DNA of 64,000 bases from Macrostomum lignano (taxonomy: Eukaryota), in contig NIVC01001686.1 in the NCBI GenBank assembly GCA_002269645.1, positions 62,001 through 126,000 of the forward strand, written 5' to 3'. Below, piece by piece: positions 3,001 to 64,000 of the stretch (position 1 is the first letter of the stretch; every line of letters starts with the position of its first letter). A program made the translations under genes and the position numbers. The notes under the pieces are model-generated. The model was not told where the DNA came from. It did not search any database and saw only the letters and a program-made list of their open reading frames with translations.

Positions 3001-4230
3001 GCGGCGCTTGTCAAAATACTGGCCTACCATGACCAGAGCCGGCAGGTACATCATGCCGAAGCCAAATCCTGCAGCGAGTGTTTCGAAAGCAAGTCCGAGA
3101 GTTCATTTGAGGTCAGTGTGCAAATATCAAATCTGAATACAAATCATAATCGTCATAATTTCAATCATAATCCCCAATGACCCAGCTGAGTCTCACCGCC
3201 CAGAAAACCGTAGGTGAGGATCAGCAGAGACACAGAGTTGGCCACCACAGCGCACACGCAGGCGCCGCAGGCGAGCAGGCCACCGAACATGGACACTTTG
3301 CGGCAGCCGAATCTGTCGCAGAGGAAACTCACGAATGGGCCTGTCGAGGCGGATGTACGACAAAGATGTTGGTGTCTTGAGTATCCAGATGCAGTTCAGG
3401 GTATTCAAGCTGCTGTAACAAACTATTCAGGTATCCAGGGTAATTATTCAGGTATCATGGTAGTTTTTCAGGTATCAGGGTACTTATTCAGGTAACGAGG
3501 GTTTAATTATTCATGCATATGGAGTAGCTATCCAGGTATCCAGGGTAATTATTCAGGTATCCAGGGTATTTATTCAGGTATCTAGAGTAATTATTCAGGT
3601 ATCTAGGGTAATTATTCAGGTATCCAGGTTTAATTATTCATGCATCTAGAGTAGCTATCCAGGTATGTAGAGTAATTATTCAGGTATCCAGGGTAATTAT
3701 TCAGGTATCTAGGGTAATTACTCACGTGTCAAGGGTAATTATTCACGTGTCTAGGGTAATTATTCAGGTATCTATGGTAACTATTCCGGTATCCAGGGTA
3801 ACTATCCAGGTATCCAGGGTAATTATTCAGGCATATAGAGTATTTGTCCAGGTATTCAGGGTAATTAATTATTCAGGTATCCAGGATAATTATTTAAATA
3901 TCTTGGGTAATTATTCAGGTATAGCGTAATTATTCGGGTATCCAAGGTACTATTCAGATGCCAAGATACTATTCAGACACTACACAAGTACAGCTAATAA
4001 AAGTACATCCACTGACCAATAAACATGTACATCCCATTGTACACGCTACCAATCCAAGCCGTCTTAGCCTTGGACTCTTGAAAGTACTCCAAGAACTCGT
4101 TGTAGAACAGGCCAAATGAAAAGCTGATGCCGTCAAGAATGACGCCAACCATGAAGGCTGAAAATGTCACCACCCAGCCGTAGCCGCCATCGAGTGGGAT
4201 TCGAACCACGGCCTCACCTGTAGACTGCAT
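1..4230 (-). CDS. SLC16/monocarboxylate transporter (MFS) family gene, 3'-truncated at window edge; coding exons 4230-4017, 3340-3197, 3068-2883, 2242-1867, 1285(or 1282)-936, 813-544, 97-<1
   Basis: Family motifs PLDGGYGW (TM1) and YFDKRRALATGIAVCGSG (loop 4/5). All six introns are GT-AG and phases chain correctly (1,1,1,2,1,1). The last visible exon reads AIFVALRSIIGIELVGIDNLSEAFGFIILCQG, typical of MCT TM10-11. Confidence 0.92.
1331..1665 (+). repeat. 67-bp minisatellite, about 5 copies, in MCT intron 4
   Basis: Unit GTGATTCATGAGGTTCTCTACGTTGCTTTGCACGAAACCTAAAACCCTCCAGAGTGCTCATCTGGAA starts at 1331 and recurs at 1398 onward, with small ATTC insertions. Confidence 0.9.
2299..2830 (+). repeat. 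Diverged ~300-bp tandem duplication with internal TGAGGCTCCCGAAGTG subrepeats (MCT intron 3)
   Basis: CATAGTT(A/T)AACTTGA...TGAGG blocks start near 2299 and 2598 and share downstream sequence (TTTATCAGTGATT, CATGGTACAATTTA). Confidence 0.75.
3420..3950 (+). repeat. Degenerate 21-bp minisatellite GGTATCCAGGGTAATTATTCA (MCT intron 1)
   Basis: Over 20 imperfect copies visible. Confidence 0.9.
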
Positions 4231-4461
4231 CTTTTGACTTTCTTCAGTGCAGGATGAAGGAGAACTTTTTGAACAATTGTTAGTTCCAATTAATAATCTA
4301 AACTGACATGCAAACCACGGTCTGCATTGTAAAATAATAAAACACCTTTATCTGGAGTGTCAGGTGTCAAATTTACCGAATTCTTATATTGCAATTGCCT
4401 TTATAGAAGCAACAGACTGAGGGGTGCAAAGGTTCCTGATAACAGTGAATGACTTGTGAGA

Positions 4462-12570: not shown

Positions 12571-12909
12571 ATTCTCACTGTGCCCCTTAATACATATAAG
12601 CAAGACACCTCATGAGCTGAGAACTCTCCTGTCCCAACGGAGAACAATATTCATACCGCATCAAATTCCTTGTTAAATCCACCAGAGAAAGGACTGGCAC
12701 ACGGTTACCTGTCTTCTGAATGAACATTTCAAACCTAATGACATACAATAGCAGTCATAATCTCGCTGAATTGTGTAAGCCCATTTCCATCAGCAGGTGC
12801 TGATTAAAGCAGGCAAATATTCTATTTGACAATATCCACTCCATGCGAATATTCAAAGCATTGTATACTGCATGGACTATCAATAAATCGTCCTTGACGC
12901 TTTCAGGTC

Positions 12910-23040
<10,131 letters not shown>

Positions 23041-25975: not shown

Positions 25976-26569
25976 GTGACGAAAAGTTTATGCACACTGT
26001 AAATTCTGCTTATTATGGTAGAAAAGTTGAATGCACGTTAAGGCCATCAAGGAGGGTTACATGTACAAAATATCATATTGCTTTAATTACATTTTATTGC
26101 TCTGGGTCATTATCATTTTAACTAACATTGCTGTGCTCAGAAATCGGCAATCAACAATTCAAGTAATGCTTGTTAAGCAAACAGTAAGGACTGCGTAGTT
26201 GGTGCAGTCACTATGAGTTATTATCGCTATTTTCCTAAAAATGGGATCAAGTGCAAACAGTTGCAATTAAATAGCGCTGTGAATAATGATACTGCTTGCT
26301 CATAGTCAGCTCAATTTTGTTGGGTTAATTGTATTATATGTAAAGCGATCCATTTGAGCCATTTGAAATTTAACTGATTTGATCAGTTATTCAGGAAATT
26401 TGACACAATTATTAAAAATATTTTGAGTCGGTAGTGAGGGTTCATGAATTGTTCAGTTTTAACTGCTTAAAGGTCCAATTGACTTAAAAGATCCATTGAG
26501 TCATGGAACTAAGAGAAACATTGACTCAGGAATCCATTGGGCTCACGGACATGCACATTGACTCGGACT

Positions 26570-26824
26570 CATTCACTCAGGGACATATTCACTCAGGGAC
26601 ATATTCACTCAGGGACATATTCACTCAGGGACATATTCACTCAGGGACACATTCACTCAGGGACACATTCACTCAGGGACATATTCCCTCAGGGACACAT
26701 TCACTCAGGGACATATTCACTCAGGCACATATTCCCTCAGGGACACATTCACTCAGGGACATATTCACTCAGGGACATATTCCCTCAGGGACACATTCAC
26801 TCAGGGACATATTCACTCAGGGAC
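26570..26824 (+). repeat. 16-bp minisatellite ACTCAGGGACATATTC
   Basis: About 16 copies directly abutting the stop codon of the sirtuin-like ORF. Confidence 0.93.
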
Positions 26825-26837
26825 CCATTGGCTCAAT

Positions 26838-27962
26838 TCAGTCGATTCTCTTGGAGCGCCAACTCGTCTCTCCCGGCGCCACCGTGAGCGCCAGCCAGAA
26901 CTCGCCGCGCCAGCCGTCAGCCGCCAGGCTGCACTCGAACGCTGGCGGCCTCCAGCCGTCGCCACGCCGCAGCGGCCGGAACAGCAGCCGCAAAGTCAGC
27001 GACATCACCGACGCCGGTCTGAGCGGCCGGAGCTGCACGCAGCTCGCGTTCAACGGCACGTCGAATTCGAACGGCGGTCGTCGCCGCCATTCTGCGTCGC
27101 TGCCGCCGCCGTAGCCAAGCCCGACTGCCGCCAGCATCGTGGAGATGAAGTCCTCGTCGGGGTCCTTCAGCAGCACAGACACCCGATCCGCGGTGGCACG
27201 AACGCGGAGCCGACAGTGGACGATCCATCGAAGCGACTTTGGCGACTGCAGCGGAGCCAGCAGTCGGATCAGGAGCTTGGCTGGCGACGCGGCCACTCGC
27301 TCGTCTGCCTCGTCGTCCAGCGGGGATCGCGAAAGTCCGCAGACCACGAGACGGCGCCAACATTGGCGGCGCTGACGGCGCTCAGATCGGTGCCAATCGG
27401 CAACTCGGTAGTCGCGTCGAACAGTTCCAAGCAGCAGCAGCAGGTCCGCCGACTCGATTGTCGACGCAATGACGTCATCGTTCTTGATGACGTCATCGCT
27501 ACGAAGAGGCGCGGAGAGAGCTCCTCCGCAGGCGGGGCACAACCTGCCCGACGAATCGCCGTCGCTGTCAAAGTCCCAGTGAACTACGGTGCTTCGCCTG
27601 CGGCAGGCGTCACTGCCTCTCAGGCGACATCGTCGAAAGTCCGACTGCCGGCGGCCTGCAGCAGTTTGGCCGGCGGAAAACCGGCGCGACGCAACCGGCC
27701 GTCCGAGGTGTCGACGATCGTGGCACTGACGAGGCCGGCGGCGGCCAGAGCAGCCAGAGCGAGGTGCCCGACTCCAGGCTCGTCGACGCCGAGGTCCGAC
27801 TGGTTGTCAATGCCGCTGCCAACGATGGCAAGGACGCGGCCGTCAGGTGCCGACTTGGCCATCCAGGTGCCGATATCAGCCGCCTGTCTGTCGGTTGTTG
27901 CTTCAGGAGCTTCTGACAGCGGCTGCAGAAATTTGTGATTGCCTTGGCGACGTCGGGCATTT
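26838..27962 (-). CDS. Class IV (SIRT6/7-like) sirtuin homologue lacking catalytic residues, with a C-terminal YEATS-like domain; a 1-nt frameshift at ~27641-27643 splits it into two ORFs (pseudoenzyme or pseudogene)
   Basis: Frame A gives VLAIVGSGID and HLALAALAAAGLVSATIVDTSDGRLRRAGFPPAKLLQAAGS, which aligns without gaps to SIRT6 H95-N135 as recalled. Frame B continues with four Cys (C-x7-C-x21-CPAC), SADLLLLLGT and RRLVVCGLSRSPLDDEADERV. Splice acceptor TTCTCAG at 27963-27969; the N-terminal exon and start codon were not identified. Confidence 0.8.
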
Positions 27963-27987
27963 CTGAGAATAGTGTTGAGCAATATGA

Positions 27988-28797
27988 CAACTCAGAAACT
28001 CAGCAACTCAGTAATTCAACAACTCAGCAGCTCAGTAACTCTGCAACTCAGAAACTCAGCAACTCAGCAACTCAGAAACTCAGCAACTCAAAAACTCAGC
28101 AACTCAGCAACTCAGCAACTCAGTAACTCAGTAACTCAGCAACTCATCAACTCTGCAACTCATCAACTCAGCAACTCAGTAACTCTGCAACTCAGAAACT
28201 CAGCAACTCAGAAACTCAGCAACTCAGAAACTCAGCAACTCAGAAACTCAGCAACTCAGTAACTCAGCAACTCAGCAACTCAGCAACTCATCAACTCTGC
28301 AACTCAGCAGCTCAGCAATTCAGCAACTCATCAACTCAGCAACTCAGCAACTCATCAACTCATCAACTCAGCAACTCATCAACTCATCAACTCAGCAACT
28401 CATCAACTCAGCAACTCAGCAACTGAGCAACTCATCAACTCAGCAACTCATCAACTCATCAACTCATCAACTCAGCAACTCAGCAACTCAGCAACTCAGC
28501 AACTCATCAACTCAGCAACTCAGTAACTCAGCAACTCAGCAACTCATCAACTCAGCAACTCAGTAACTCTGCAACTCAGCAACTCAGTAACTCAGCAACT
28601 CAGCAACTCAGCAACTCAGTAACTCAGAAACTCAGAAACTCAGCAACTCAGCAACTCAGCAACTCAGCAACTCAGCAACTCAGTAACTCAGAAACTCAGA
28701 AACTCAGAAACCCAGCAACTCAGCAACTCAGAAACTCAGAAACTCAGAAACTCAGTAACTCAGCAACTCAGTAACTCAGAAACTCAGAATCTCATCA
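27988..28797 (+). repeat. 8-bp satellite (AACTCAGC)n with variants
   Basis: About 100 units in the intron 5' of the sirtuin-like exon. Confidence 0.96.
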
Positions 28798-29329
28798 ACA
28801 TGGGGAAACGACAACTTAGCTAAAAGATAACAAATAGTATTTTCAGGAAGAACTTACCGAATTCGCAGTCAGATTCCAATGTTTATTCGAAGAACGAGTT
28901 TCAACGCTCTATGCGCTAAGAAGTCGCGCAGTTGACGCATAGCGAGACAAAGTCGCTAAGATGCTTTGCGCGGACGCGGCTTCTTCATATATGGTAAAAA
29001 AGCCGTCTCGTTTTACTGTTCTCAGCCGGCTTCATAAATAATTAATACCAAAAATAACTTGACAACCTAAGATGGGGGCAATTCTGCTGAGTGGAACCGT
29101 GGCAACAATGAATGAATTTTTCATAGCTTTTTGGCGAAATTAGTTTGCAAGTACGATGCGGTGTGTTAAGACATGTTTTATATTGTTCTTTAGTGCTTAG
29201 GTTGACCGGATCTGCTGAGCTTCGTCACTAATTTTTACATGATTCTCATAGGTGATTTTAGGATTTTTCGATCACTTTACGAGCGTATGATTCGAGAGAG
29301 ACGTCATTATTTTTCTCTGATTTCACTGC

Positions 29330-35443: not shown

Positions 35444-36775
35444 TCAGTCGTACAAGGAGTCGTGCGACTTGGCCAGCTTCTGTCCGTGCCCTTCAATGTG
35501 CTGCAACGATCCACAACCCGTGGCCGCGTCTCCGCTGCCGCCGGCGCTGGTCCCGTCGCCACCATTGTTGGCGTACAGGCATTTCAGGTGCACGGTCTCC
35601 AAGGCGTGCGAATCTGCGCCGGAGGTCATATCGGCTGTAGCGTCGGCATTGGCGGCCGCGGCTTCGGCCGCCCGACGGCAAACTCCGCAGACCAGCGGAC
35701 GGGCCGCCAGACGGTAGACGTCGCTGCGAAATTTGGCGGAGCTGGCCGAGTATACGAAGAAATTTAACAGAGAATCGGTGACGGACAACACGTTGGTGAT
35801 GGTGTCCGGGTGGATCGGCAGCGTGCCCTGCAAGCTTGGAGACACAATCAGCATCGTAGTGGACACGAAGGTTGGAAACTCGAGCACGGAGAACAGGATG
35901 GCCAGGCCGAGGACCATCTGGCTGGCTCTGCGCGAGCTCAGCGTCCGTTTCTGCTGACTGCGCCCGGCATTCTGACGGCAAGAGTGGCCGCACCGTTTCG
36001 CTGGCCGGCTGCGTCGAATCTTCACCCACATGATCACGGTGGGGATCGGGATGAGCACTGTTGGAATCAGCGACTGAAAAGCGTACAGAGCCCACTGGGC
36101 GCCTGACGAGTTCATGAGAGGCCGGATGACGACCAGGTCTGGCAGGTTGGTGCACAGCGCCCCCATGTGGCCGAGGTTGTTCAGGACGGCCAGCAGGAGG
36201 GCGACGGCGATCACGGCGCAGAACATCCCGGCCAGGCGAGTCCGGCTGAACAGCAAGAAACGACGCGAAGCCAACGGCCGGGCGATGACTTCGCAACGGG
36301 CTGAACTAATCAACAGTACGTTCCAGTTCCTGATGGACACCAGAGTGTTGATGCCGATGTGTACGCAGGTTGTCACCGTGTAGCTAGGCACAGTGTGCCA
36401 GTGCTCAAAGTCGCTACGAACGATGCCAGTCTCCACTAGCAGGATGCACTGCAGGCAGATCTCGGTGCACGAGATTGACAGCAGGGAGAAGCGGACAGCT
36501 CGATTGTCGAATTTCTGCTTGGCGAAGATGAACAGCGAGAGCGAATTGGCAACCAGAGCCACGGCGGCGATGGGCAGAATGATGAGGCTGTTGAATTTTT
36601 CTGTCTCCACAAAGCCGTGTCCGTGATCTTTGAGGGTTTTATTGGGCTCGGATTCGTTGCACCAGTCTCTGATGTAGTATAGCATGGCTGCTGGAGCTGG
36701 GAAGCAAGTTGGGTAAGGGTTCAATTCGTTAGGCAATTTGGCTTTAATGCACTTGTCGATTTCAAGAAAAGTCAT
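35444..36775 (-). CDS. Class A (rhodopsin-like) orphan GPCR, 443 aa, single coding exon; peptide-receptor-related
   Basis: Seven hydrophobic segments; N-terminal sequons NES and NKT; TM1 ..ANS; TM3 RNWNVLLISSARCEVIARP; TM6 LFSVLEFP; TM7 DSLLNFFVY followed by helix 8 KFRSDV; Cys in TM3 and ECL2. A branch-point-like CTAAC and an acceptor lie at ~36812-36833, upstream of the ATG. Confidence 0.93.
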   Translation of the reverse strand: MTFLEIDKCIKAKLPNELNPYPTCFPAPAAMLYYIRDWCNESEPNKTLKDHGHGFVETEKFNSLIILPIAAVALVANSLSLFIFAKQKFDNRAVRFSLLSISCTEICLQCILLVETGIVRSDFEHWHTVPSYTVTTCVHIGINTLVSIRNWNVLLISSARCEVIARPLASRRFLLFSRTRLAGMFCAVIAVALLLAVLNNLGHMGALCTNLPDLVVIRPLMNSSGAQWALYAFQSLIPTVLIPIPTVIMWVKIRRSRPAKRCGHSCRQNAGRSQQKRTLSSRRASQMVLGLAILFSVLEFPTFVSTTMLIVSPSLQGTLPIHPDTITNVLSVTDSLLNFFVYSASSAKFRSDVYRLAARPLVCGVCRRAAEAAAANADATADMTSGADSHALETVHLKCLYANNGGDGTSAGGSGDAATGCGSLQHIEGHGQKLAKSHDSLYD

Positions 36776-43384: not shown

Positions 43385-43653
43385 TTAATAATAACAATAA
43401 CTGATTACACCTGACCTAATTGGGCAGATGTGCAACCGACAGCTCAGCCGAAGCCAAACAGCTCAGCCGTACGGCTGTTCTGTCCAAGGACTGGGAGGTC
43501 GCCACACACGCCCTCAATGCTGGCACCTATTTTGAAGCAATGCTAATTCTAAGTGTCTTTCTCAAGAACACAAATTATTCCAGCGGGATCGGGAATCGAA
43601 CCCCCGACCTTCAAGTCGAGAGTCCGACGCTCTAACCACTAAGCTAAAACCCT
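43385..43653 (-). mobile_element. tRNA-derived SINE
   Basis: Head contains an A box (TAGCTTAGTGG) and a B box (GGTTCGATTCCC), but acceptor and anticodon stems are broken. It is followed by a GTGTTCTTGAGAAAGACACTTA hairpin motif resembling conserved SINE central domains, and an AT-rich (TTA-like) tail. Confidence 0.75.
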
Positions 43654-56300: not shown

Positions 56301-59300
56301 GGCTGCAGCAGCAACAGCGCGCAGTTTCGAGGCCTCAGCAGCAGCTACCCAGCCACTAACAGCAAACGGCTGCTACAACTCGTCTGAGAAAAGACAATTA
56401 TTGCAGAGCGGCCCAGCCGAGCCAGAAACTGCGGTTGGGTATTTTGTGGAGCGCGAGAGAGCGAAAACAGCTCGTCAGAGCAGAGCAGCAGGTAAAAACG
56501 GTACCGTTGGAAGAGAAAGCCTGAGTCAGAGCCTGCTATCTAGCGAACAACAGGAACCTGTGGTTGGCGTTGAAAATTCTTTAACGAATTCAACTGCTAG
56601 GTAAATTGTTCTTTTTTTACTTCCTTCAAAGTTTCTGGTCAAGGAGAATTGACGTTTCTTTCAAATGAAACTATCATTGATAATGTCAATTCTTCATGCA
56701 GAGCTCAACACGTGTTCCAACTGCAGCCGGCCCCTGGTCAGAACTCTGCACACAAAGGACGTGGCGTTGCGGGAAACCTTGCAACCGCATCAACAGCTGA
56801 TAAAGTGGGCGCAATACGTTTTTGTTAACTGTTCTTAACCTTATTTAAACCCCGAAAGATCGCCAGGCATCTCTTCAACCCGAGATATGTTTGCCAAAGT
56901 AATGTAGCTTTTGTCTATGGTTGCAAGGCATCAATTTGATCCATACTAGCCGCTATGAAGCCCAATCGGGCGTTCGTTAGACAGTCTGGCATATGCATGT
57001 TTCACGATTCTGGGCACTGCTTCCGTCCTCACTGCTTATGACAGTCATGTCTAAATGAAAATCTAGGGGTGAAACTATACAGAAGCCGCTATATGGACCA
57101 AACTGATGCTTGTTGGACCAAATTAAATGCCGCTGTGCCAGTCTTGCTACCATAGGCAGAAGCTTCGTGACTTTGGCAAACGTATCTTGGATTAAATTCA
57201 ATGCATCTACATGTAGGCCAAAATGGGCTGCAAAAAGATATACACTCTCAGTAATATTGAAAAGTTTCCACGTCTGCACAAAAGGCTACACTAGCTGAAC
57301 GATTAGGGATTGAAAGGGTTTTAACTATGTTTGGGCCATAGACAATCAAAATAAGGCAACAAAGAATGAACAGCGAAACAAGTCCATGCAGGTATACAGG
57401 TCAGTAACCTATATAGTCAATAGTCAGTAACAGGTATAGATAGCAACCACGAGCGTCCAACAGACCGCTCACTCGCCGAGGCATTCCCGAACAAGGCGCC
57501 ACAGAAAGTCTTGTGGAAGCTGTTGCCACGCGACTGAAAGCGTATTGCGCAGCTGGACCATGTTCTGGGGGCATAGAGATTGTTATTGCACCGAATCGTG
57601 CGCTTCAGGAAATCCCACACGTACTCAATCAGGTTCATATCTGGTGATCTGGACGGCCAACGCAAAGTGCGCCAATCAGTCATTTGGCGGACTATCGTTG
57701 TCACCTGCATCCAGATGCCTCGAGTAAACCCCTGTACACTCGTTACTGTAACGCTTTTCCCTGTGACACCAGACATCGGTCTTTACACTTTCCTGCTCTT
57801 TTTGCTCATTTGTCTATGGCCCAAAGCCAATTGGCGAAACCATCGATCGTGCTGCCCATGGACCCTTGGGGCCAGGGTGGACACTTTTAAATGTTGCTGA
57901 GTGTATATTAAAATAGCACCGTGTCTGAGGTTTTTAATGAAGCTTGATTTTGTACGTCAAAAAGGTTTTAATATCAGACAAACTTTGACCTGTTTGCCCA
58001 CGTTGCAGAAACCCGTCTCTTACGGCTACAATTGGCTACAAGAATTCAATAAAATGTCAATGACTGAAGCTGAGATTGAACGTGTAAGAACTTATGGAGC
58101 ACCTGTAGCTCTTATTATATGTATGCCCCAATGTTTCGGCGAACTACGGTGGTCTACAAAGAATCTACAGTGTCAAGGACTACTGAAGTAGAGGGACAGG
58201 AAACTATAAGCTTGTTGGAAAATTTTAAATGAATAAGAACCTGCGTTAGAACCCGCCTCCTAAAATTTTCTAAGAAACGAGGTTTCCCGTCCTTCTACTC
58301 GAGTAGTCCTTGCTACGTGTACGAAAAATTTGGGTTGAGTTGGGAAAAGTTTTGTTGGTACTTAATTCTGCGCGTTCGCAGCTATCATTCCCTATGATTT
58401 CAAATGTCCCAATTACTTACTTATTTTTCAGCGGGTCAAGAATGGTGGAAAACTGCGAAACAGCGCCTCTCAAACAACGCGATTTGAGCTGCCATTCGAT
58501 TTGAAGGACCTGGAAGGTGCGTGATATGGTATAGTTTCATGTATTCGTAGTTCGCAGGTGGGCTTTGCGTGAGCAATGCCGCTCAAACCATAAATTCTGG
58601 CCTAAGAAACAATGAGGACTGCGAGACCAAATGTACTTTTACGAGAATAGGACCTGATGATCAAAATGCCGTGTGTACATGGGTAGAAAGTGAAGTTCAC
58701 ATCCTGTTAAAGTTGTTGGAACTTTAATAGTGCCCCCATGATTAATTTGAACTGGATATCTCGGATAGTTTTGAATTTTCAATACCTTACTGCAGAGGAT
58801 TAAGTACCTACATGTATAATTAATATCGATAGGCTATCGATATCGAATATTAATCGATCTGTTTACGCTTGAAATATAATTTTAATTCCCATTTACGTTG
58901 AAAGTTCTATTCAGTTTAATTTTTTTCATTTTGTTTTACTTCCTCTGTATTAATTTACAGTGCGTGTCCACGTGCGAATATAATACTAAAGAATAACAAA
59001 TATTTACTATTTTATTTTAAATTATTTTAGTATATATTTAATATTAATACATAATTATAATGAAAAAATAAGTTAATTAGAATATTAAAATTAGGAATGC
59101 AAGCACTAGCTCTGATAAATATTATCACGATAAATATTATGTTAATGATAATATTTACAAAAATTAAAATTAGTTATCATTAATTAACCACAGGAACTAA
59201 ATACTCTGTCTCTCTTAAATTGAAGTTAGATTTAACAAATTTTATTTAGCAAATGCAATTCAAATATCCATATAGCCTCATCTAAACTGTTCACCCACAG

Positions 59301-62566: not shown

Positions 62567-63651
62567 TCACTGCTGCTCAGCCGTGGCCAGGCCAAGCTGA
62601 TGGTAGGCGGCGGCGGTGGCCGGGTCAATTCCGTAGTAGAGCGAGCCGTCCGTGGTGTACATGGCCGAGCTGGCGGCCGAGGTCATCAGGTGCGGCGCGG
62701 CGGCGTACATCCCGGACATTTGGTAGCCGGACGGGTCCAGCTGTGATGTACAGGGGGGGGGGGCATTAATGGTCAGCTTTGCCGTGTAAAACTCGATGCG
62801 CATGCGAACTTAGTGTTTTAGCTAGCACCCAACTCAGCTATCTACCAACTCAGCTACCACCCAACTCAGCTACCTACCAACTCAGCTAACACCCAACACA
62901 GCTACCTACCAACTCAACTACCTACCAACTCAGCTACTACCCAACTCAGCTACTACCCAACTCAGCTACTACCCAACTCAGCTACCACCCAACTCAGCTA
63001 CCACACAACTCAGCTACCACCCAACTCAGCTACCTACCAACTCAGCTACCTACCAACTCAGCTACCTACCAACTCAGCTACCTACCAACTCAGCTACCTA
63101 CCAACTCAGCTACCTACCAACTCAGCTACCTACCAACTCAGCTACCTACCAACTCAGCTACCTACCAACTCAGCTACCACCCAACTCAGCTACCACCCAA
63201 CTCAGCTACCACCCAACTCAGCTACCACCCAACTCAGCTACCACCCAACTCAGCTACCACACTGCTCAACCAGCCAGAACCGCACCTGGTAGATGGAGTG
63301 TCCCTGCGCCACGGACACGGGAGCGGCGCTAGCGGCGCCGGGCATCAGCTGGTAGCCTCCGGGAATGGCGGCGCCAGTCTGCGTTGGCGCACCAACGGAA
63401 GCCCGCGTGGCTGCGGCAGCGGCGGCGGCGTACAGCGAGGCAGCGGTGGCGGCCGCCGAGCCTGGCTGAAAAGTCTGGCTGTACAGGTGGTGCGGAAGCT
63501 GATGATGGCCCGGATGCGGCTGCTGCTGCTGAGGTTGCTGCTGCTGCTGCTGGAGCTGGAGCTGGTGGGCCGAAGGAGCCGCGTAGCCCCTGGCAGCTGC
63601 TAGCGCAGCGGCTGCAGCGGCGGCTGCAGCGGCGGAATTCTGCTGCTGTTG

Positions 63652-63687
<36 letters not shown>

Positions 63688-64000
63688 ATGGTGCAGCAGA
63701 GCCATGGAGGCGAGCTGGTGAGCGGCAGCGGCAGAGGCCGGAGGCGCTTGCATTGCCGGCTGTCCCGCGGCGGCGGCGGCAGCGGCAGCGGCGGCGGCTG
63801 CGGCCAGCTGCTGCTGCTGATGATGCTGAACTGTCTGCACCTGCTGCACCTGATGATGCTGCTGCTGCTGCTGCTGGCGCTGCTTCTTGCGCTGGTTGGT
63901 TTTGTCGGCCAGTTTGGCTTCTAGCGGCCTGGCTGTGCCGAGCTTCTGGCCGAGGGCCACGCCGACTTTGTTGATGTGCGAGATGGCCAGGACGGCGTCC
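62567..64000 (-). CDS. 3' end of a probable RRM RNA-binding protein with a polyQ/polyA, Tyr-rich low-complexity C-terminus; exons >64000-63286 and 62740-62567
   Basis: The first visible residues DAVLAISHINK...RPLEAKLADKTNQRKK resemble RRM helix 2/beta 4 plus linker of CELF/RBMS/ELAV-type proteins. A phase-0 intron CAG|GTGCGG...CACAG|CTG joins the two ORFs. The exon structure is firmer than the family call. Confidence 0.7.
62826..63260 (+). repeat. 15/16-bp minisatellite CCAACTCAGCTACC(T)A
   Basis: About 28 copies filling most of the last intron of the RRM-like gene. Confidence 0.95.

What the first reader, a model, noticed from the sequence alone, without database searches (positions are those of the whole stretch)
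26838..27962. Candidate pseudo-sirtuin: SIRT6-like fold with catalytic residues replaced but the Zn site intact
Seen: the ORF track splits this gene into two unannotated ORFs. The segment HLALAALAAAGLVSATIVDTSDGRLRRAGFPPAKLLQAAGS aligns without gaps to human SIRT6 H95-N135 (recalled; 15/41 identities). In that alignment the catalytic His133 is Ala, the QN motif is DT and H119 is Leu. GAGIS is GSGID, and only 10 residues separate it from the PxxxH helix versus about 35 in SIRT6, so the PDFRG cofactor loop is gone. GTS is GTV and the NLQ Asn is Gly. All four Zn cysteines and the Rossmann-fold strands (SADLLLLLGT, RRLVVCGL..LDDEADERV) are retained. Knowledge: these residues are required for NAD+-dependent deacylation. 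Inference: heavy active-site loss with ~1.1 kb otherwise free of in-frame stops suggests selection on a non-catalytic sirtuin (scaffold or dominant-negative partner), a class that is rarely described.
Basis: partly seen in the sequence, partly recalled or inferred. Interest (0 to 1): 0.85.

Follow-up and report, generated by a model that had tools for sequence, protein, structure and literature searches.

The report
Catalytically dead, frameshifted sirtuin-derived gene
This 1.1-kb GC-rich island in an animal genome descends from a SIRT6/7-type sirtuin gene and has lost every polar cofactor-binding and catalytic residue while keeping its structural ones, so it probably survived for a time as a non-enzymatic protein; here it is broken by a one-base frameshift, so it may be a recently dead gene.

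Summary
Minus-strand ORFs 27620-27982 and 26838-27542 are two halves of one sirtuin homologue, split by a 1-nt deletion between 27643 and 27630.

**Homology.** Pfam's SIR2 model finds nothing. An exhaustive phmmer search gives 57 hits; all ten best hits scanned carry SIR2 (best E 2.9e-11). A family HMM built without the window scores the repaired protein at 79.6 bits. The closest relatives are protist and fungal class-IV sirtuins with a C-terminal beta domain, which this locus also retains weakly. They are not animal SIRT6.

**Lost residues.** The catalytic His is Ala, QN is DT, GTS is GTV and NLQ is GLS. The cofactor loop is deleted. One Zn cysteine is displaced, giving Cx7C instead of CxxC.

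**Pseudo-enzyme or pseudogene?** Stop-freeness and codon periodicity can be reproduced by GC-biased neutral drift. The retention pattern cannot: of 51 conserved columns, polar residues are kept 0/13 and all others 25/38 (p about 1e-4). This points to selection on the scaffold after catalysis was lost.

Two neighbouring genes (2.4 kb of coding sequence) carry no frameshift. The break is therefore slightly more likely real than an assembly artefact.

No orthologues or transcripts could be reached. Interest is moderate.

The parts
27988..28799 (.). Upstream flank: minisatellite (CAACTCAG)n, about 101 copies. It ends 28 nt before the candidate ATG.
   Evidence: Tandem Repeats Finder.
27958..27960 (-). 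Candidate start codon (MPDVAKA..., in a third frame). It is usable only with a second, tentative 1-nt frameshift near 27936 or a 29-nt GT..AG removal (27923-27951). The alternative start is the in-frame ATG at 27860-27862 (MAKSAP...).
   Evidence: Sequence reading. The resemblance to the family N-terminus MA(D/W)TAHK was judged by eye only. The family HMM does not reach this far. Tentative.
27623..27991 (-). Open frame A, the N-terminal half of the sirtuin core. GSGID lies at 27806-27820 (position of GAGIS). PGVGH lies at 27764-27778 (PxxxH helix, kept). DT lies at 27707-27712 (QN lost). DG lies at 27698-27703 (kept). Ala lies at 27650-27652 in place of the catalytic His.
   Evidence: Family HMM positions 83-129, E 9e-6 at Z=1000. 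tblastn of 11 homologues. Coordinates. The codon-position GC phase fits this frame from about 27940 to 27610.
27630..27643 (-). Frameshift zone: a 1-nt deletion (or 2-nt insertion) between the Ser codon after the Ala-Gly at the His-Gly position (27644-27646) and the first Zn Cys codon (27627-27629). The frame-A stop TGA lies at 27620-27622.
   Evidence: Homology switches frame here, and the GC phase switches at about 27610-27550. The repaired junction scores 79.6 bits against 68.2 bits for a 29-nt GT..AG intron model.
27528..27629 (-). Zn-ribbon module. Cys1 lies at 27627-27629 (kept). The Cys2 position is Arg (27618-27620), with a displaced Cys at 27603-27605. CPAC lies at 27528-27539 (Cys3 and Cys4 kept).
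   Evidence: Alignments and coordinates. The loop between the Cys pairs has pLDDT below 50 in the model.
27237..27527 (-). Second half of the Rossmann core. ADLLLLLGTV has GTV at 27420-27428 (GTS lost). RLVVCGLS has GLS at 27330-27338 (NLQ lost). PLDDEADERV is kept. There is an 8-residue deletion in the conserved DTIINFGE segment and an Arg-rich inserted loop.
26841..27236 (-). C-terminal beta-sandwich domain typical of this class-IV subfamily, much diverged. The GHYxEP motif reads DGWRPP and the terminal Trp is kept. The domain ends at the family's natural end.
   Evidence: It adds 9.3 bits to the full-family HMM score, and 0 of 1000 shuffles reach that total. Alone it is not significant. GC3 here is 0.8-0.9. 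AF2 model pLDDT is 78.7.
26838..26840 (-). Stop codon TGA of frame B.
26571..26824 (.). Downstream flank: 16-nt minisatellite (ATTCACTCAGGGACAT)n. It starts 14 nt after the stop.
   Evidence: Tandem Repeats Finder.

Best explanation
The locus is an intronless descendant of a class-IV (SIRT6/7-type) sirtuin of the subfamily that carries a C-terminal beta-sandwich domain.

**Shown.** It is colinear with that family from about residue 20 to the family's natural stop. It has lost the residues that bind NAD+ and carry out deacylation. These are the catalytic His, the Asn of QN, the Ser of GTS, the Asn of NLQ and the FRG cofactor loop. From its sequence, it cannot be a deacylase, ADP-ribosyltransferase or NADase.

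**Inferred.** After that loss it went on evolving as a protein-coding gene under selection for its scaffold, that is, as a pseudo-sirtuin. If it acted, it did so by binding rather than catalysis. The candidate binding surfaces are what is left of the Rossmann core, the Zn ribbon and the C-terminal domain. A likely role is decoy or scaffold for partners of a catalytic paralogue.

**Inferred, less sure.** The copy in this assembly carries a genuine 1-nt deletion at 27630-27643 that truncates the protein after about 120 residues. It is therefore a recently inactivated gene or a null allele, caught before further decay.
For: **Homology**
- Exhaustive phmmer gives 57 hits at E<=1e-3, best 2.9e-11. 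All ten best hits scanned carry SIR2.
- An independent family HMM scores 79.6 bits.
- Foldseek of the AF2 model puts human SIRT6 first (E 6.5e-11).
- The C-terminal domain adds 9.3 bits, and 0 of 1000 shuffles reach that total.

**Catalytic loss**
- Of 15 columns invariant in 57 homologues, N, E, H, C, S and N are changed.

**Selection on the scaffold**
- Among 51 aligned columns conserved at >=80%, polar residues are kept 0/13 and the rest 25/38. Fisher gives 3e-5. The conditional P under codon-aware neutral models is 4e-5 to 3e-4.
- The homologous frame path has no stop in 374 codons. The other two minus-strand frames each contain several stops across the ORF-B span.
- With a background-like mutation spectrum, P(no stop) is below 0.4% at 40% residue replacement.
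- At least three lineage-specific indels in conserved segments are in frame.
- CpG observed/expected is 1.24, against 0.65 for the whole window.
- GC3 is 0.74, the same as the intact GPCR in the window.

**Frameshift real rather than intron or assembly noise**
- The indel model scores 11.4 bits above the intron model.
- The P2X gene (about 1.1 kb of coding sequence) and the GPCR (1.33 kb) show no frameshift.
Against: - There are no orthologues, paralogues or transcripts, so there is no dN/dS and no evidence of expression.
- GC-biased neutral drift (equilibrium GC 0.8-0.9) reproduces the observed GC1/2/3. It leaves the frame stop-free in 6-43% of runs.
- The fraction of consensus residues kept is about the same (0.49-0.62 of a typical member) in every conservation class.
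- Several changes look destructive for the fold. There is a 5-residue insertion inside the first CxxC. There are deletions of about 25 and 8 residues in conserved segments. The motifs of the C-terminal domain are degraded.
- The grouping of residues into polar and other was chosen after seeing the data.
- Catching a long-lived gene just after its death is a priori unlikely.
- The AF2 model relies on the homologues' alignment, so it is not independent evidence of foldability.
Confidence: 0.4

Rival explanations
1. It is a live pseudo-sirtuin. The gene is intact in the organism and encodes a non-catalytic protein of about 340-374 residues. The single-base frameshift is an assembly or consensus error, or a variant of one haplotype.
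For: All the evidence for scaffold selection applies here too. Apart from one indel there is no lesion at all. Both candidate frame changes are single-base deletions next to short homopolymers (TTT, AAA), which is the usual type of long-read consensus error. A 64-kb contig that is 39% minisatellite implies long-read assembly. A long-lived gene is more likely to be sampled alive than just after its death.
Against: The neighbouring P2X (about 1.1 kb) and GPCR (1.33 kb) coding sequences have no frameshift. The homopolymers are only 3 nt long. If the ATG at 27960 is the true start, a second error is needed. No transcript or read data are available.
Confidence: 0.3
2. It is an ordinary, long-dead pseudogene, for instance a retrocopy of a canonical class-IV sirtuin. 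All changes, including the catalytic ones, accumulated neutrally under a locally GC-biased substitution regime. It remained stop-free by luck.
For: The locus has a frameshift, large deletions in conserved segments, an insertion in the Zn knuckle and no introns. Composition is shifted to Gly/Ala/Arg/Pro (0.377, against 0.286 in homologues; Arg 12.3%). Simulated GC-biased drift ends at GC1/2/3 of about 0.69/0.57/0.75, against 0.69/0.55/0.74 observed, with P(no stop) of 6-43%. The retention ratio is flat across conservation classes. Class-IV sirtuin families are known to have been lost repeatedly in bilaterians (PMC9486876).
Against: Zero of 13 conserved polar residues are kept against 25 of 38 others, which is not neutral even after allowing for codon GC content. 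The GC-rich composition stops exactly at the ORF borders, and the flanks are 31-47% GC, so a local neutral equilibrium of 0.8-0.9 is hard to justify. Under the background spectrum P(no stop) is below 0.4%. With 0.16-0.24 substitutions per site one would expect several frameshifting indels; this rests on general knowledge of indel-to-substitution ratios in pseudogenes, not on anything measured here. Only 1-2 are seen, alongside at least 3 in-frame indels. CpG is not depleted.
Confidence: 0.2
3. The reading frame is restored in the mRNA by two 29-nt GT..AG mini-introns (27923-27951 and 27615-27643) or by programmed recoding. There would then be no lesion at all.
For: Both frame changes can be bridged by a GT..AG interval of exactly 29 nt. 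The first interval is AT-richer and ends in TTTCTGCAG (sequence reading).
Against: The spliced version of the second junction loses the first Zn Cys and scores 11.4 bits worse than the indel repair. GT..AG pairs of the right length class are expected by chance. The only short intron seen in the window, in P2X between 20880 and about 20965, is about 85-90 nt. No slippery site was seen by eye.
Confidence: 0.05

Closest known systems
Class-IV sirtuins with a C-terminal extension. Examples are the Balamuthia mandrillaris Sir2-family protein KAL6073944.1, the Paratrimastix pyriformis protein KAJ4461701.1 and Xylaria longipes 'sirtuin-7' KAI8951282.1. Plant SRT1 may be the same type, but that rests on my memory and on the OsSRT1 preprint 10.1101/2021.11.05.467508 and was not tested here.
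   Same: These are the best sequence matches (31% identity, E 2.9e-11). The architecture is colinear: N-terminal helix, Rossmann core, Zn ribbon, and a C-terminal beta domain of about 130 residues ending at the same point.
   Different: Every homologue keeps GAGIS, FRG, QN, HG, CxxC, G(S/T)S and NLQ, and the window protein has lost them all. It shares 25% identity with them, while they share 42% with one another. All named homologues are protists or fungi, whereas the window is from an animal.
Human SIRT6 (for example PDB 3pki, 6xv6, 7cl0)
   Same: It is the best solved-structure match both by sequence (E 0.0055) and by fold (Foldseek E 6.5e-11, TM 0.45-0.57). There is an ungapped 41-residue alignment across the QNxDG...HG region.
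   Different: SIRT6 is an active deacylase and ADP-ribosyltransferase with His133 and an intact cofactor loop. It lacks the C-terminal beta domain. It scores only 19 bits, against 59.8 bits for the protist-type subfamily.
SIR8 and SIR9, class-IV sirtuin families of early animals that were lost in most bilaterians (Gold and Sinclair 2022, PMC9486876)
   Same: They are extra class-IV paralogues in animals with a history of repeated lineage-specific loss. SIR9 survives in some annelids and molluscs. A decaying or repurposed extra class-IV gene in an animal fits that picture.
   Different: Membership was not tested. Their diagnostic motifs are in supplements that I did not read. SIR8 has an N-terminal CAP-C domain that is absent here. 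The paper predicts NAD binding and hydrolase activity for SIR8, and reports no inactive members.
Pseudoenzymes of other deacylase families, for example class IIa HDACs (PMC12383505)
   Same: These are enzyme-fold proteins with a substituted catalytic residue that act mainly as scaffolds or readers (abstract listed).
   Different: The fold and chemistry are unrelated. Class IIa HDACs keep their cofactor site and are conserved and expressed. None of that is shown here.

Membership tests
Sirtuin / SIR2 superfamily (homology) | Significant sequence similarity to SIR2-domain proteins | tested here: met
   phmmer against 1.84e9 proteins gives 57 hits, best E 2.9e-11, and all ten best hits scanned carry PF02146. 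A family HMM built without the window sequence scores 79.6 bits. Only the two colinear minus-strand frames hit it.
Sirtuin / SIR2 superfamily (homology) | Passes Pfam PF02146 gathering threshold | tested here: not met
   hmmscan of both ORFs and of the repaired protein gives no family at E<=10.
Sirtuin / SIR2 superfamily (homology) | Rossmann fold plus Zn-ribbon small domain | tested here: inconclusive
   The AF2 model has pLDDT 78.5 and pTM 0.76, and its best PDB matches are SIRT6 and Sir2Tm. The model was built from an alignment of sirtuins, so it is not independent. The Zn-module loop has pLDDT below 50.
Active NAD+-dependent sirtuin (enzyme) | Catalytic histidine (SIRT6 His133) | tested here: not met
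   Ala at 27650-27652. The column is 100% His in 57 homologues.
Active NAD+-dependent sirtuin (enzyme) | NAD+-binding motifs GAGIS, FRG loop, QN, G(T/S)S and NLQ | tested here: not met
   GSGID by position only; about 25 residues including FRG and the conserved Trp deleted; QN->DT; GTS->GTV; NLQ->GLS.
Active NAD+-dependent sirtuin (enzyme) | Zn site CxxC...CxxC | tested here: inconclusive
   Cys1, Cys3 and Cys4 are kept. The Cys2 position is Arg, with a Cys five residues later (Cx7C). Whether Zn still binds cannot be told from sequence.
Active NAD+-dependent sirtuin (enzyme) | Uninterrupted reading frame | tested here: not met
   A frame change lies between 27643 and 27630, with a TGA at 27620-27622 in the upstream frame.
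Class-IV subfamily with C-terminal beta domain | C-terminal domain homologous to that of the subfamily | tested here: met
   It adds 9.3 bits to the full-family HMM score, and 0 of 1000 shuffled C-termini reach that total. On its own it is not significant: 0.1 bits, and 25 of 2000 shuffles score as high or higher. The support is therefore weak.
Class-IV subfamily with C-terminal beta domain | Conserved motifs G.D.DGTP and GHYxEP | tested here: not met
   They read DPDEDFIS and DGWRPP. Of 34 aligned C-terminal-domain columns conserved at >=80%, 14 are kept.
Functional pseudoenzyme | Non-neutral retention of scaffold residues after loss of catalytic residues | tested here: met
   Polar residues are kept 0/13 and the rest 25/38. 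Fisher gives 3e-5, and codon-aware neutral models give P = 4e-5 to 3e-4. The grouping was chosen post hoc.
Functional pseudoenzyme | Expression, and orthologues under purifying selection | not testable with these tools
   No relative above 31% identity and no exact protein record were found in any collection.
Processed pseudogene / retrocopy | Intronless copy of a gene whose relatives have introns | tested here: inconclusive
   The locus is colinear with the protein over 1.1 kb without introns, while the P2X gene in the window has at least 5 introns. The parent gene and its structure are unknown.
Processed pseudogene / retrocopy | Poly(A) remnant and target-site duplication | tested here: not met
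   The stop is followed after 14 nt by a 16-nt minisatellite. There is no A-run. The nearest minus-strand AATAAA is about 740 nt downstream. The minisatellites may have overwritten the original flanks.

The most novel reading that the evidence does not exclude
A live, selected pseudo-sirtuin in an animal. It would be a class-IV sirtuin scaffold that has shed NAD+ chemistry but keeps a Zn module and a C-terminal beta-sandwich whose predicted fold is closest to YEATS acyl-lysine readers. It would act as a reader, decoy or scaffold on chromatin or on the partners of a catalytic paralogue. It belongs to a subfamily otherwise seen here only in protists and fungi. It would therefore be either a relic of an ancestral animal class-IV family or a horizontal acquisition.
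Probability: 0.25. Interest if true: 0.65.

Novelty: new variant of a known kind. Interest (0 to 1): 0.4.

Why it matters
Catalytically dead relatives are well known for kinases, phosphatases, proteases and class IIa HDACs. I found none described for sirtuins: two literature searches gave nothing relevant.

If this locus, or an intact orthologue, is expressed, it would show that the sirtuin fold can be kept for a non-enzymatic role. It would also give a natural dominant-negative or reader-type class-IV sirtuin to study.

If instead it is dying, it is a snapshot of the repeated loss of extra class-IV sirtuins in bilaterians reported by Gold and Sinclair (PMC9486876).

The analysis also carries a methodological warning. 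In GC-rich islands an open frame and codon periodicity do not by themselves show selection. The residue-class retention test was more informative.

Tried and rejected
- **Pfam.** hmmscan on both ORFs, the repaired protein and the other open frames of the island found no SIR2 hit. Only spurious repeat-driven hits appeared for the plus-strand ORF 26503-27114.
- **Exact-protein look-ups.** ORF B and the GPCR have no record.
- **Word-indexed homologue search.** The repaired protein gave one marginal SIR2 hit only.
- **Organism identification.** The GPCR search gave no hit at 1e-5.
- **Contig scans.** Metagenome and viral contigs hold no relatives.
- **Other copies in the window.** None was found.
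- **Mini-intron model for the frame change.** Rejected for the main junction, at 11.4 bits worse.
- **Stop-freeness as proof of selection.** Weakened by GC-biased simulations.
- **C-terminal domain as an independently significant match.** Not significant alone.
- **Sequence link between the C-terminal domain and YEATS.** None was found. The profile against PDB gives only chance CTCF hits, and Pfam gives nothing.
- **N-terminal GSGID region.** Only 3.2 bits.
- **Literature on inactive sirtuins.** Nothing relevant was found.
- **SLC16/MCT-like exon at 3997-4347.** My by-eye reading was not confirmed by Pfam.
- **Rfam tRNA hit at threshold.** ARAGORN does not confirm it.
Full report
**1. What is there**

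Window 26838-27990 is a GC-rich island (64-67% GC, against about 44% for the window). It sits between two minisatellites: (CAACTCAG)n at 27988-28799 and a 16-mer array at 26571-26824. On the minus strand it holds two ORFs in different frames, 27620-27982 and 26838-27542.

The window is from an animal genome with unusually many minisatellites; 39% of it is tandem repeat. It also carries an intact multi-exon P2X4-like receptor gene. Six ORF pieces between 12898 and 21204 align to residues 8-372 of P2X4 with E 2.7e-96. There is also an intact intronless rhodopsin-type GPCR at 35444-36775.

**2. Is it a sirtuin?**

Pfam's SIR2 model finds nothing, even at E<=10. Every more sensitive test agrees that it is a sirtuin.

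- phmmer of the frame-repaired protein against PDB puts SIRT6 first (E 0.0055), and 25 of the 26 hits are sirtuins.
- An exhaustive phmmer search of 1.84 billion representatives gives 57 hits at E<=1e-3, the best at 2.9e-11 with 31% identity over residues 29-252. All ten best hits scanned carry PF02146.
- A profile built from 11 homologues without the window sequence matches only two of all six-frame pieces, and matches them colinearly. Piece 27623-27991 covers profile positions 83-129, and piece 26841-27806 covers positions 141-329.
- The same profile scores the repaired protein at 79.6 bits.
- tblastn with each homologue gives the same two frames.

**3. Which sirtuin?**

The named best hits are protist and fungal proteins: Balamuthia, Pyxidicula, Vexillifera, Luapelamoeba, Paratrimastix, Ploeotia, Entosiphon, Florenciella and Xylaria 'sirtuin-7'. 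They are class-IV (SIRT6/7-like) sirtuins with a C-terminal extension of 110-150 residues that no Pfam model covers.

The window protein has an extension of the same length that ends at the same point. On its own that segment is not significantly similar. Within the full-length profile it adds 9.3 bits, and none of 1000 versions with a shuffled C-terminus reaches the real score.

Human SIRT6 scores 19 bits and the protist-type subfamily 59.8 bits. 'SIRT6-like' is therefore right at class level only.

**4. The frame change**

Homology and the phase of codon-position GC content both switch frame between about 27650 and 27550. The junction lies between the Ser codon at 27644-27646 and the first Zn Cys codon at 27627-27629. 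A single inserted base restores the family's spacing, HG(N/S)-x5-C.

A 29-nt GT..AG interval could also restore the frame. That version scores 11.4 bits lower and loses the first Zn cysteine.

A second frame change near 27936 would let the ATG at 27960 (MPDVAKA...) serve as start. It would give exactly the family's N-terminal length. This rests on inspection only. The in-frame ATG at 27860-27862 is an alternative start.

**5. What is lost and what is kept**

Among 57 homologues, 15 columns are invariant. The window changes six of them:

| Conserved residue | Window residue |
|---|---|
| Asn of QN | Thr |
| Glu before HG | Gln |
| catalytic His | Ala |
| second Zn Cys | Arg (a Cys sits five residues later, giving Cx7C) |
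| Ser of G(T/S)S | Val |
| Asn of NLQ | Gly |

- About 25 residues, including FRG and the conserved Trp, are deleted.
- Eight residues of the DTIINFGE segment are deleted.
- Five residues are inserted in the first CxxC.
- The GSGID = GAGIS equivalence is positional only, at 3.2 bits.
- The motifs of the C-terminal domain are also degraded. GHYxEP reads DGWRPP, and of 34 aligned C-terminal-domain columns conserved at >=80%, 14 are kept.
- Overall the protein is 25% identical to homologues that share 42% with one another.

By established sirtuin enzymology (my knowledge, not tested here), these residues are needed for NAD+ binding and for deacylation, ADP-ribosylation and NADase activity. The product cannot be an enzyme of this kind.

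**6. Pseudo-enzyme or pseudogene?**

- The homologous path has no stop in 374 codons, while the other two minus frames each contain several stops across ORF B.
- The island is so GC-rich that a 458-codon frame is open on the opposite strand, and all three minus frames are open over 27623-27806.
- I ran neutral simulations to 30-50% residue replacement, the range suggested by the loss of 6 of 15 invariant residues and of 18 of 36 aligned columns conserved at >=85%.
- Those runs give P(no stop) of 0.3% or less with a background-like spectrum and 1-3% with equilibrium GC 0.66.
- Starting from homologue-like ancestors with the window's codon usage and equilibrium GC 0.8-0.9, P(no stop) is 6-43%.
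- Those GC-biased runs end at GC1/2/3 of about 0.69/0.57/0.75, which matches the observed 0.69/0.55/0.74.

Stop-freeness, codon periodicity and the Gly/Ala/Arg/Pro-rich composition therefore do not exclude GC-biased neutral drift. The fraction of consensus residues kept is also flat across conservation classes.

Several observations argue against pure drift.

- The GC-rich composition stops at the ORF borders, so a local neutral equilibrium of 0.8-0.9 is hard to justify.
- CpG is not depleted, at 1.24 against 0.65.
- There are only one or two frameshifting indels, beside at least three in-frame indels in conserved segments.
- Most tellingly, the kept residues fall into a pattern. Among 51 aligned columns conserved at >=80%, the polar ones (N, S, T, E, Q, plus one Ile) are kept 0 of 13 and all others 25 of 38.
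- Codon-aware neutral models expect 5-6 polar residues kept. The conditional probability of none is 4e-5 to 3e-4, and Fisher gives 3e-5.

Conserved polar residues in an enzyme family are mostly ligand-binding and catalytic. Conserved Gly, Pro, Cys and hydrophobic residues are mostly structural. The pattern is what 'scaffold kept, active site purged' predicts. The grouping was chosen after seeing the data, which weakens the test somewhat.

**7. Is the frameshift real?**

The two neighbouring genes offer 2.4 kb of coding sequence without any frameshift. General assembly noise is therefore not evident, although the bound is loose.

My weights are as follows:

| Explanation | Weight |
|---|---|
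| Pseudo-sirtuin lineage now broken by a real lesion | 0.40 |
| Live pseudo-sirtuin with an assembly or haplotype artefact | 0.30 |
| Long-dead pseudogene under GC-biased drift | 0.20 |
| Mini-introns or recoding | 0.05 |

**8. How it would work (inference)**

Without a cofactor site the protein could act only by binding. The remaining surfaces are the Rossmann-like core, a Zn ribbon with three canonical ligands, and the C-terminal beta sandwich.

An AF2 model of that domain has pLDDT 78.7. Its 50 best PDB matches are all YEATS acyl-lysine readers, but only weakly (E 5e-3 and above, TM 0.4-0.5) and with no sequence support. A decoy, reader or scaffold role is the natural guess, and it is untested.

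The whole-protein AF2 model (pLDDT 78.5, best match SIRT6 at E 6.5e-11) depends on the homologues' alignment. It does not prove that this sequence folds.

**9. Origin and context**

The locus is intronless in a genome whose P2X gene has at least five introns. Its GC3 equals that of the native GPCR.

Its subfamily was seen here only in protists and fungi. Retroposition of an unsampled animal paralogue, survival of an ancestral class-IV family, and horizontal transfer all remain open. Gold and Sinclair (PMC9486876) describe extra class-IV families, SIR8 and SIR9, that were lost repeatedly in bilaterians.

No relative closer than 31% identity exists in any collection I could search.

**10. Verdict**

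Four points needed correcting: the Zn site, the GSGID equivalence, the subfamily assignment, and the meaning of the open frame.

The locus is a catalytically dead sirtuin derivative whose scaffold shows signs of past selection. Whether it is alive today is unresolved, and a young pseudogene is slightly more likely. It is a new variant of a known kind, of moderate interest (0.4).

Noticed in passing
window 26841-27236 (-) and homologues P0002, P0004, P0014, P0017, P0068-P0104: The C-terminal domain of about 130 residues in this class-IV sirtuin subfamily has no Pfam model. Its AF2 model is a beta sandwich whose 50 best PDB matches are all YEATS acyl-lysine reader domains, but only weakly (E 5e-3 and above, TM 0.4-0.5). 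The family motif GHYGEP loosely recalls the YEATS GWGEF loop, a comparison drawn from memory. If real, this would be a natural eraser-reader fusion.
   Followed up: partly
window 12898-21204 (+): An intact P2X4-like ATP-gated channel gene lies in at least six exon pieces (12898-13149, 17409-17606, 17998-18234, 19675-20127, 20665-20880, 20884-21204). It aligns to residues 8-372 of P2X4 with E 2.7e-96. Its long introns are filled with minisatellites, and one short intron is about 85-90 nt.
   Followed up: partly
window 35444-36775 (-): An intronless 443-aa rhodopsin-type GPCR (7tm_1 E 1.2e-5, Srw-like E 1.3e-5) has GC3 of 0.75. It has no homologue at E<=1e-5 among 5.8 billion proteins, so it is a very divergent orphan receptor.
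   Followed up: partly
whole window: 39% of the 64 kb is tandem repeat. There are more than 30 distinct mini- and microsatellite arrays (periods 4-185 nt), and they abut the coding islands directly. Coding islands are GC-rich (58-67%) within roughly 40-45% GC surroundings.
   Followed up: no
window 63250-64000 (-): Another GC-rich island (up to 72% GC) has a poly-Gln/poly-Ala-rich open frame that runs off the window end. There is no Pfam hit. It may be an exon of a low-complexity nuclear protein.
   Followed up: no
window 57420-57782 (-): A relic of a Tc1/mariner-type transposase (DDE_3, E 1.5e-5, below the gathering score).
   Followed up: no
window 43583-43653 (-): Rfam reports a tRNA exactly at its gathering score (29 bits, E 0.059), but ARAGORN finds no tRNA in the window. 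It is probably a tRNA-derived relic or a chance match.
   Followed up: partly
window 26562-27935 (+): A 458-codon open frame lies antisense to the sirtuin-like ORF and is codon-aligned with frame B. It has no family hit. It is a by-product of avoiding A-ending codons in the sense frame, not a gene.
   Followed up: yes
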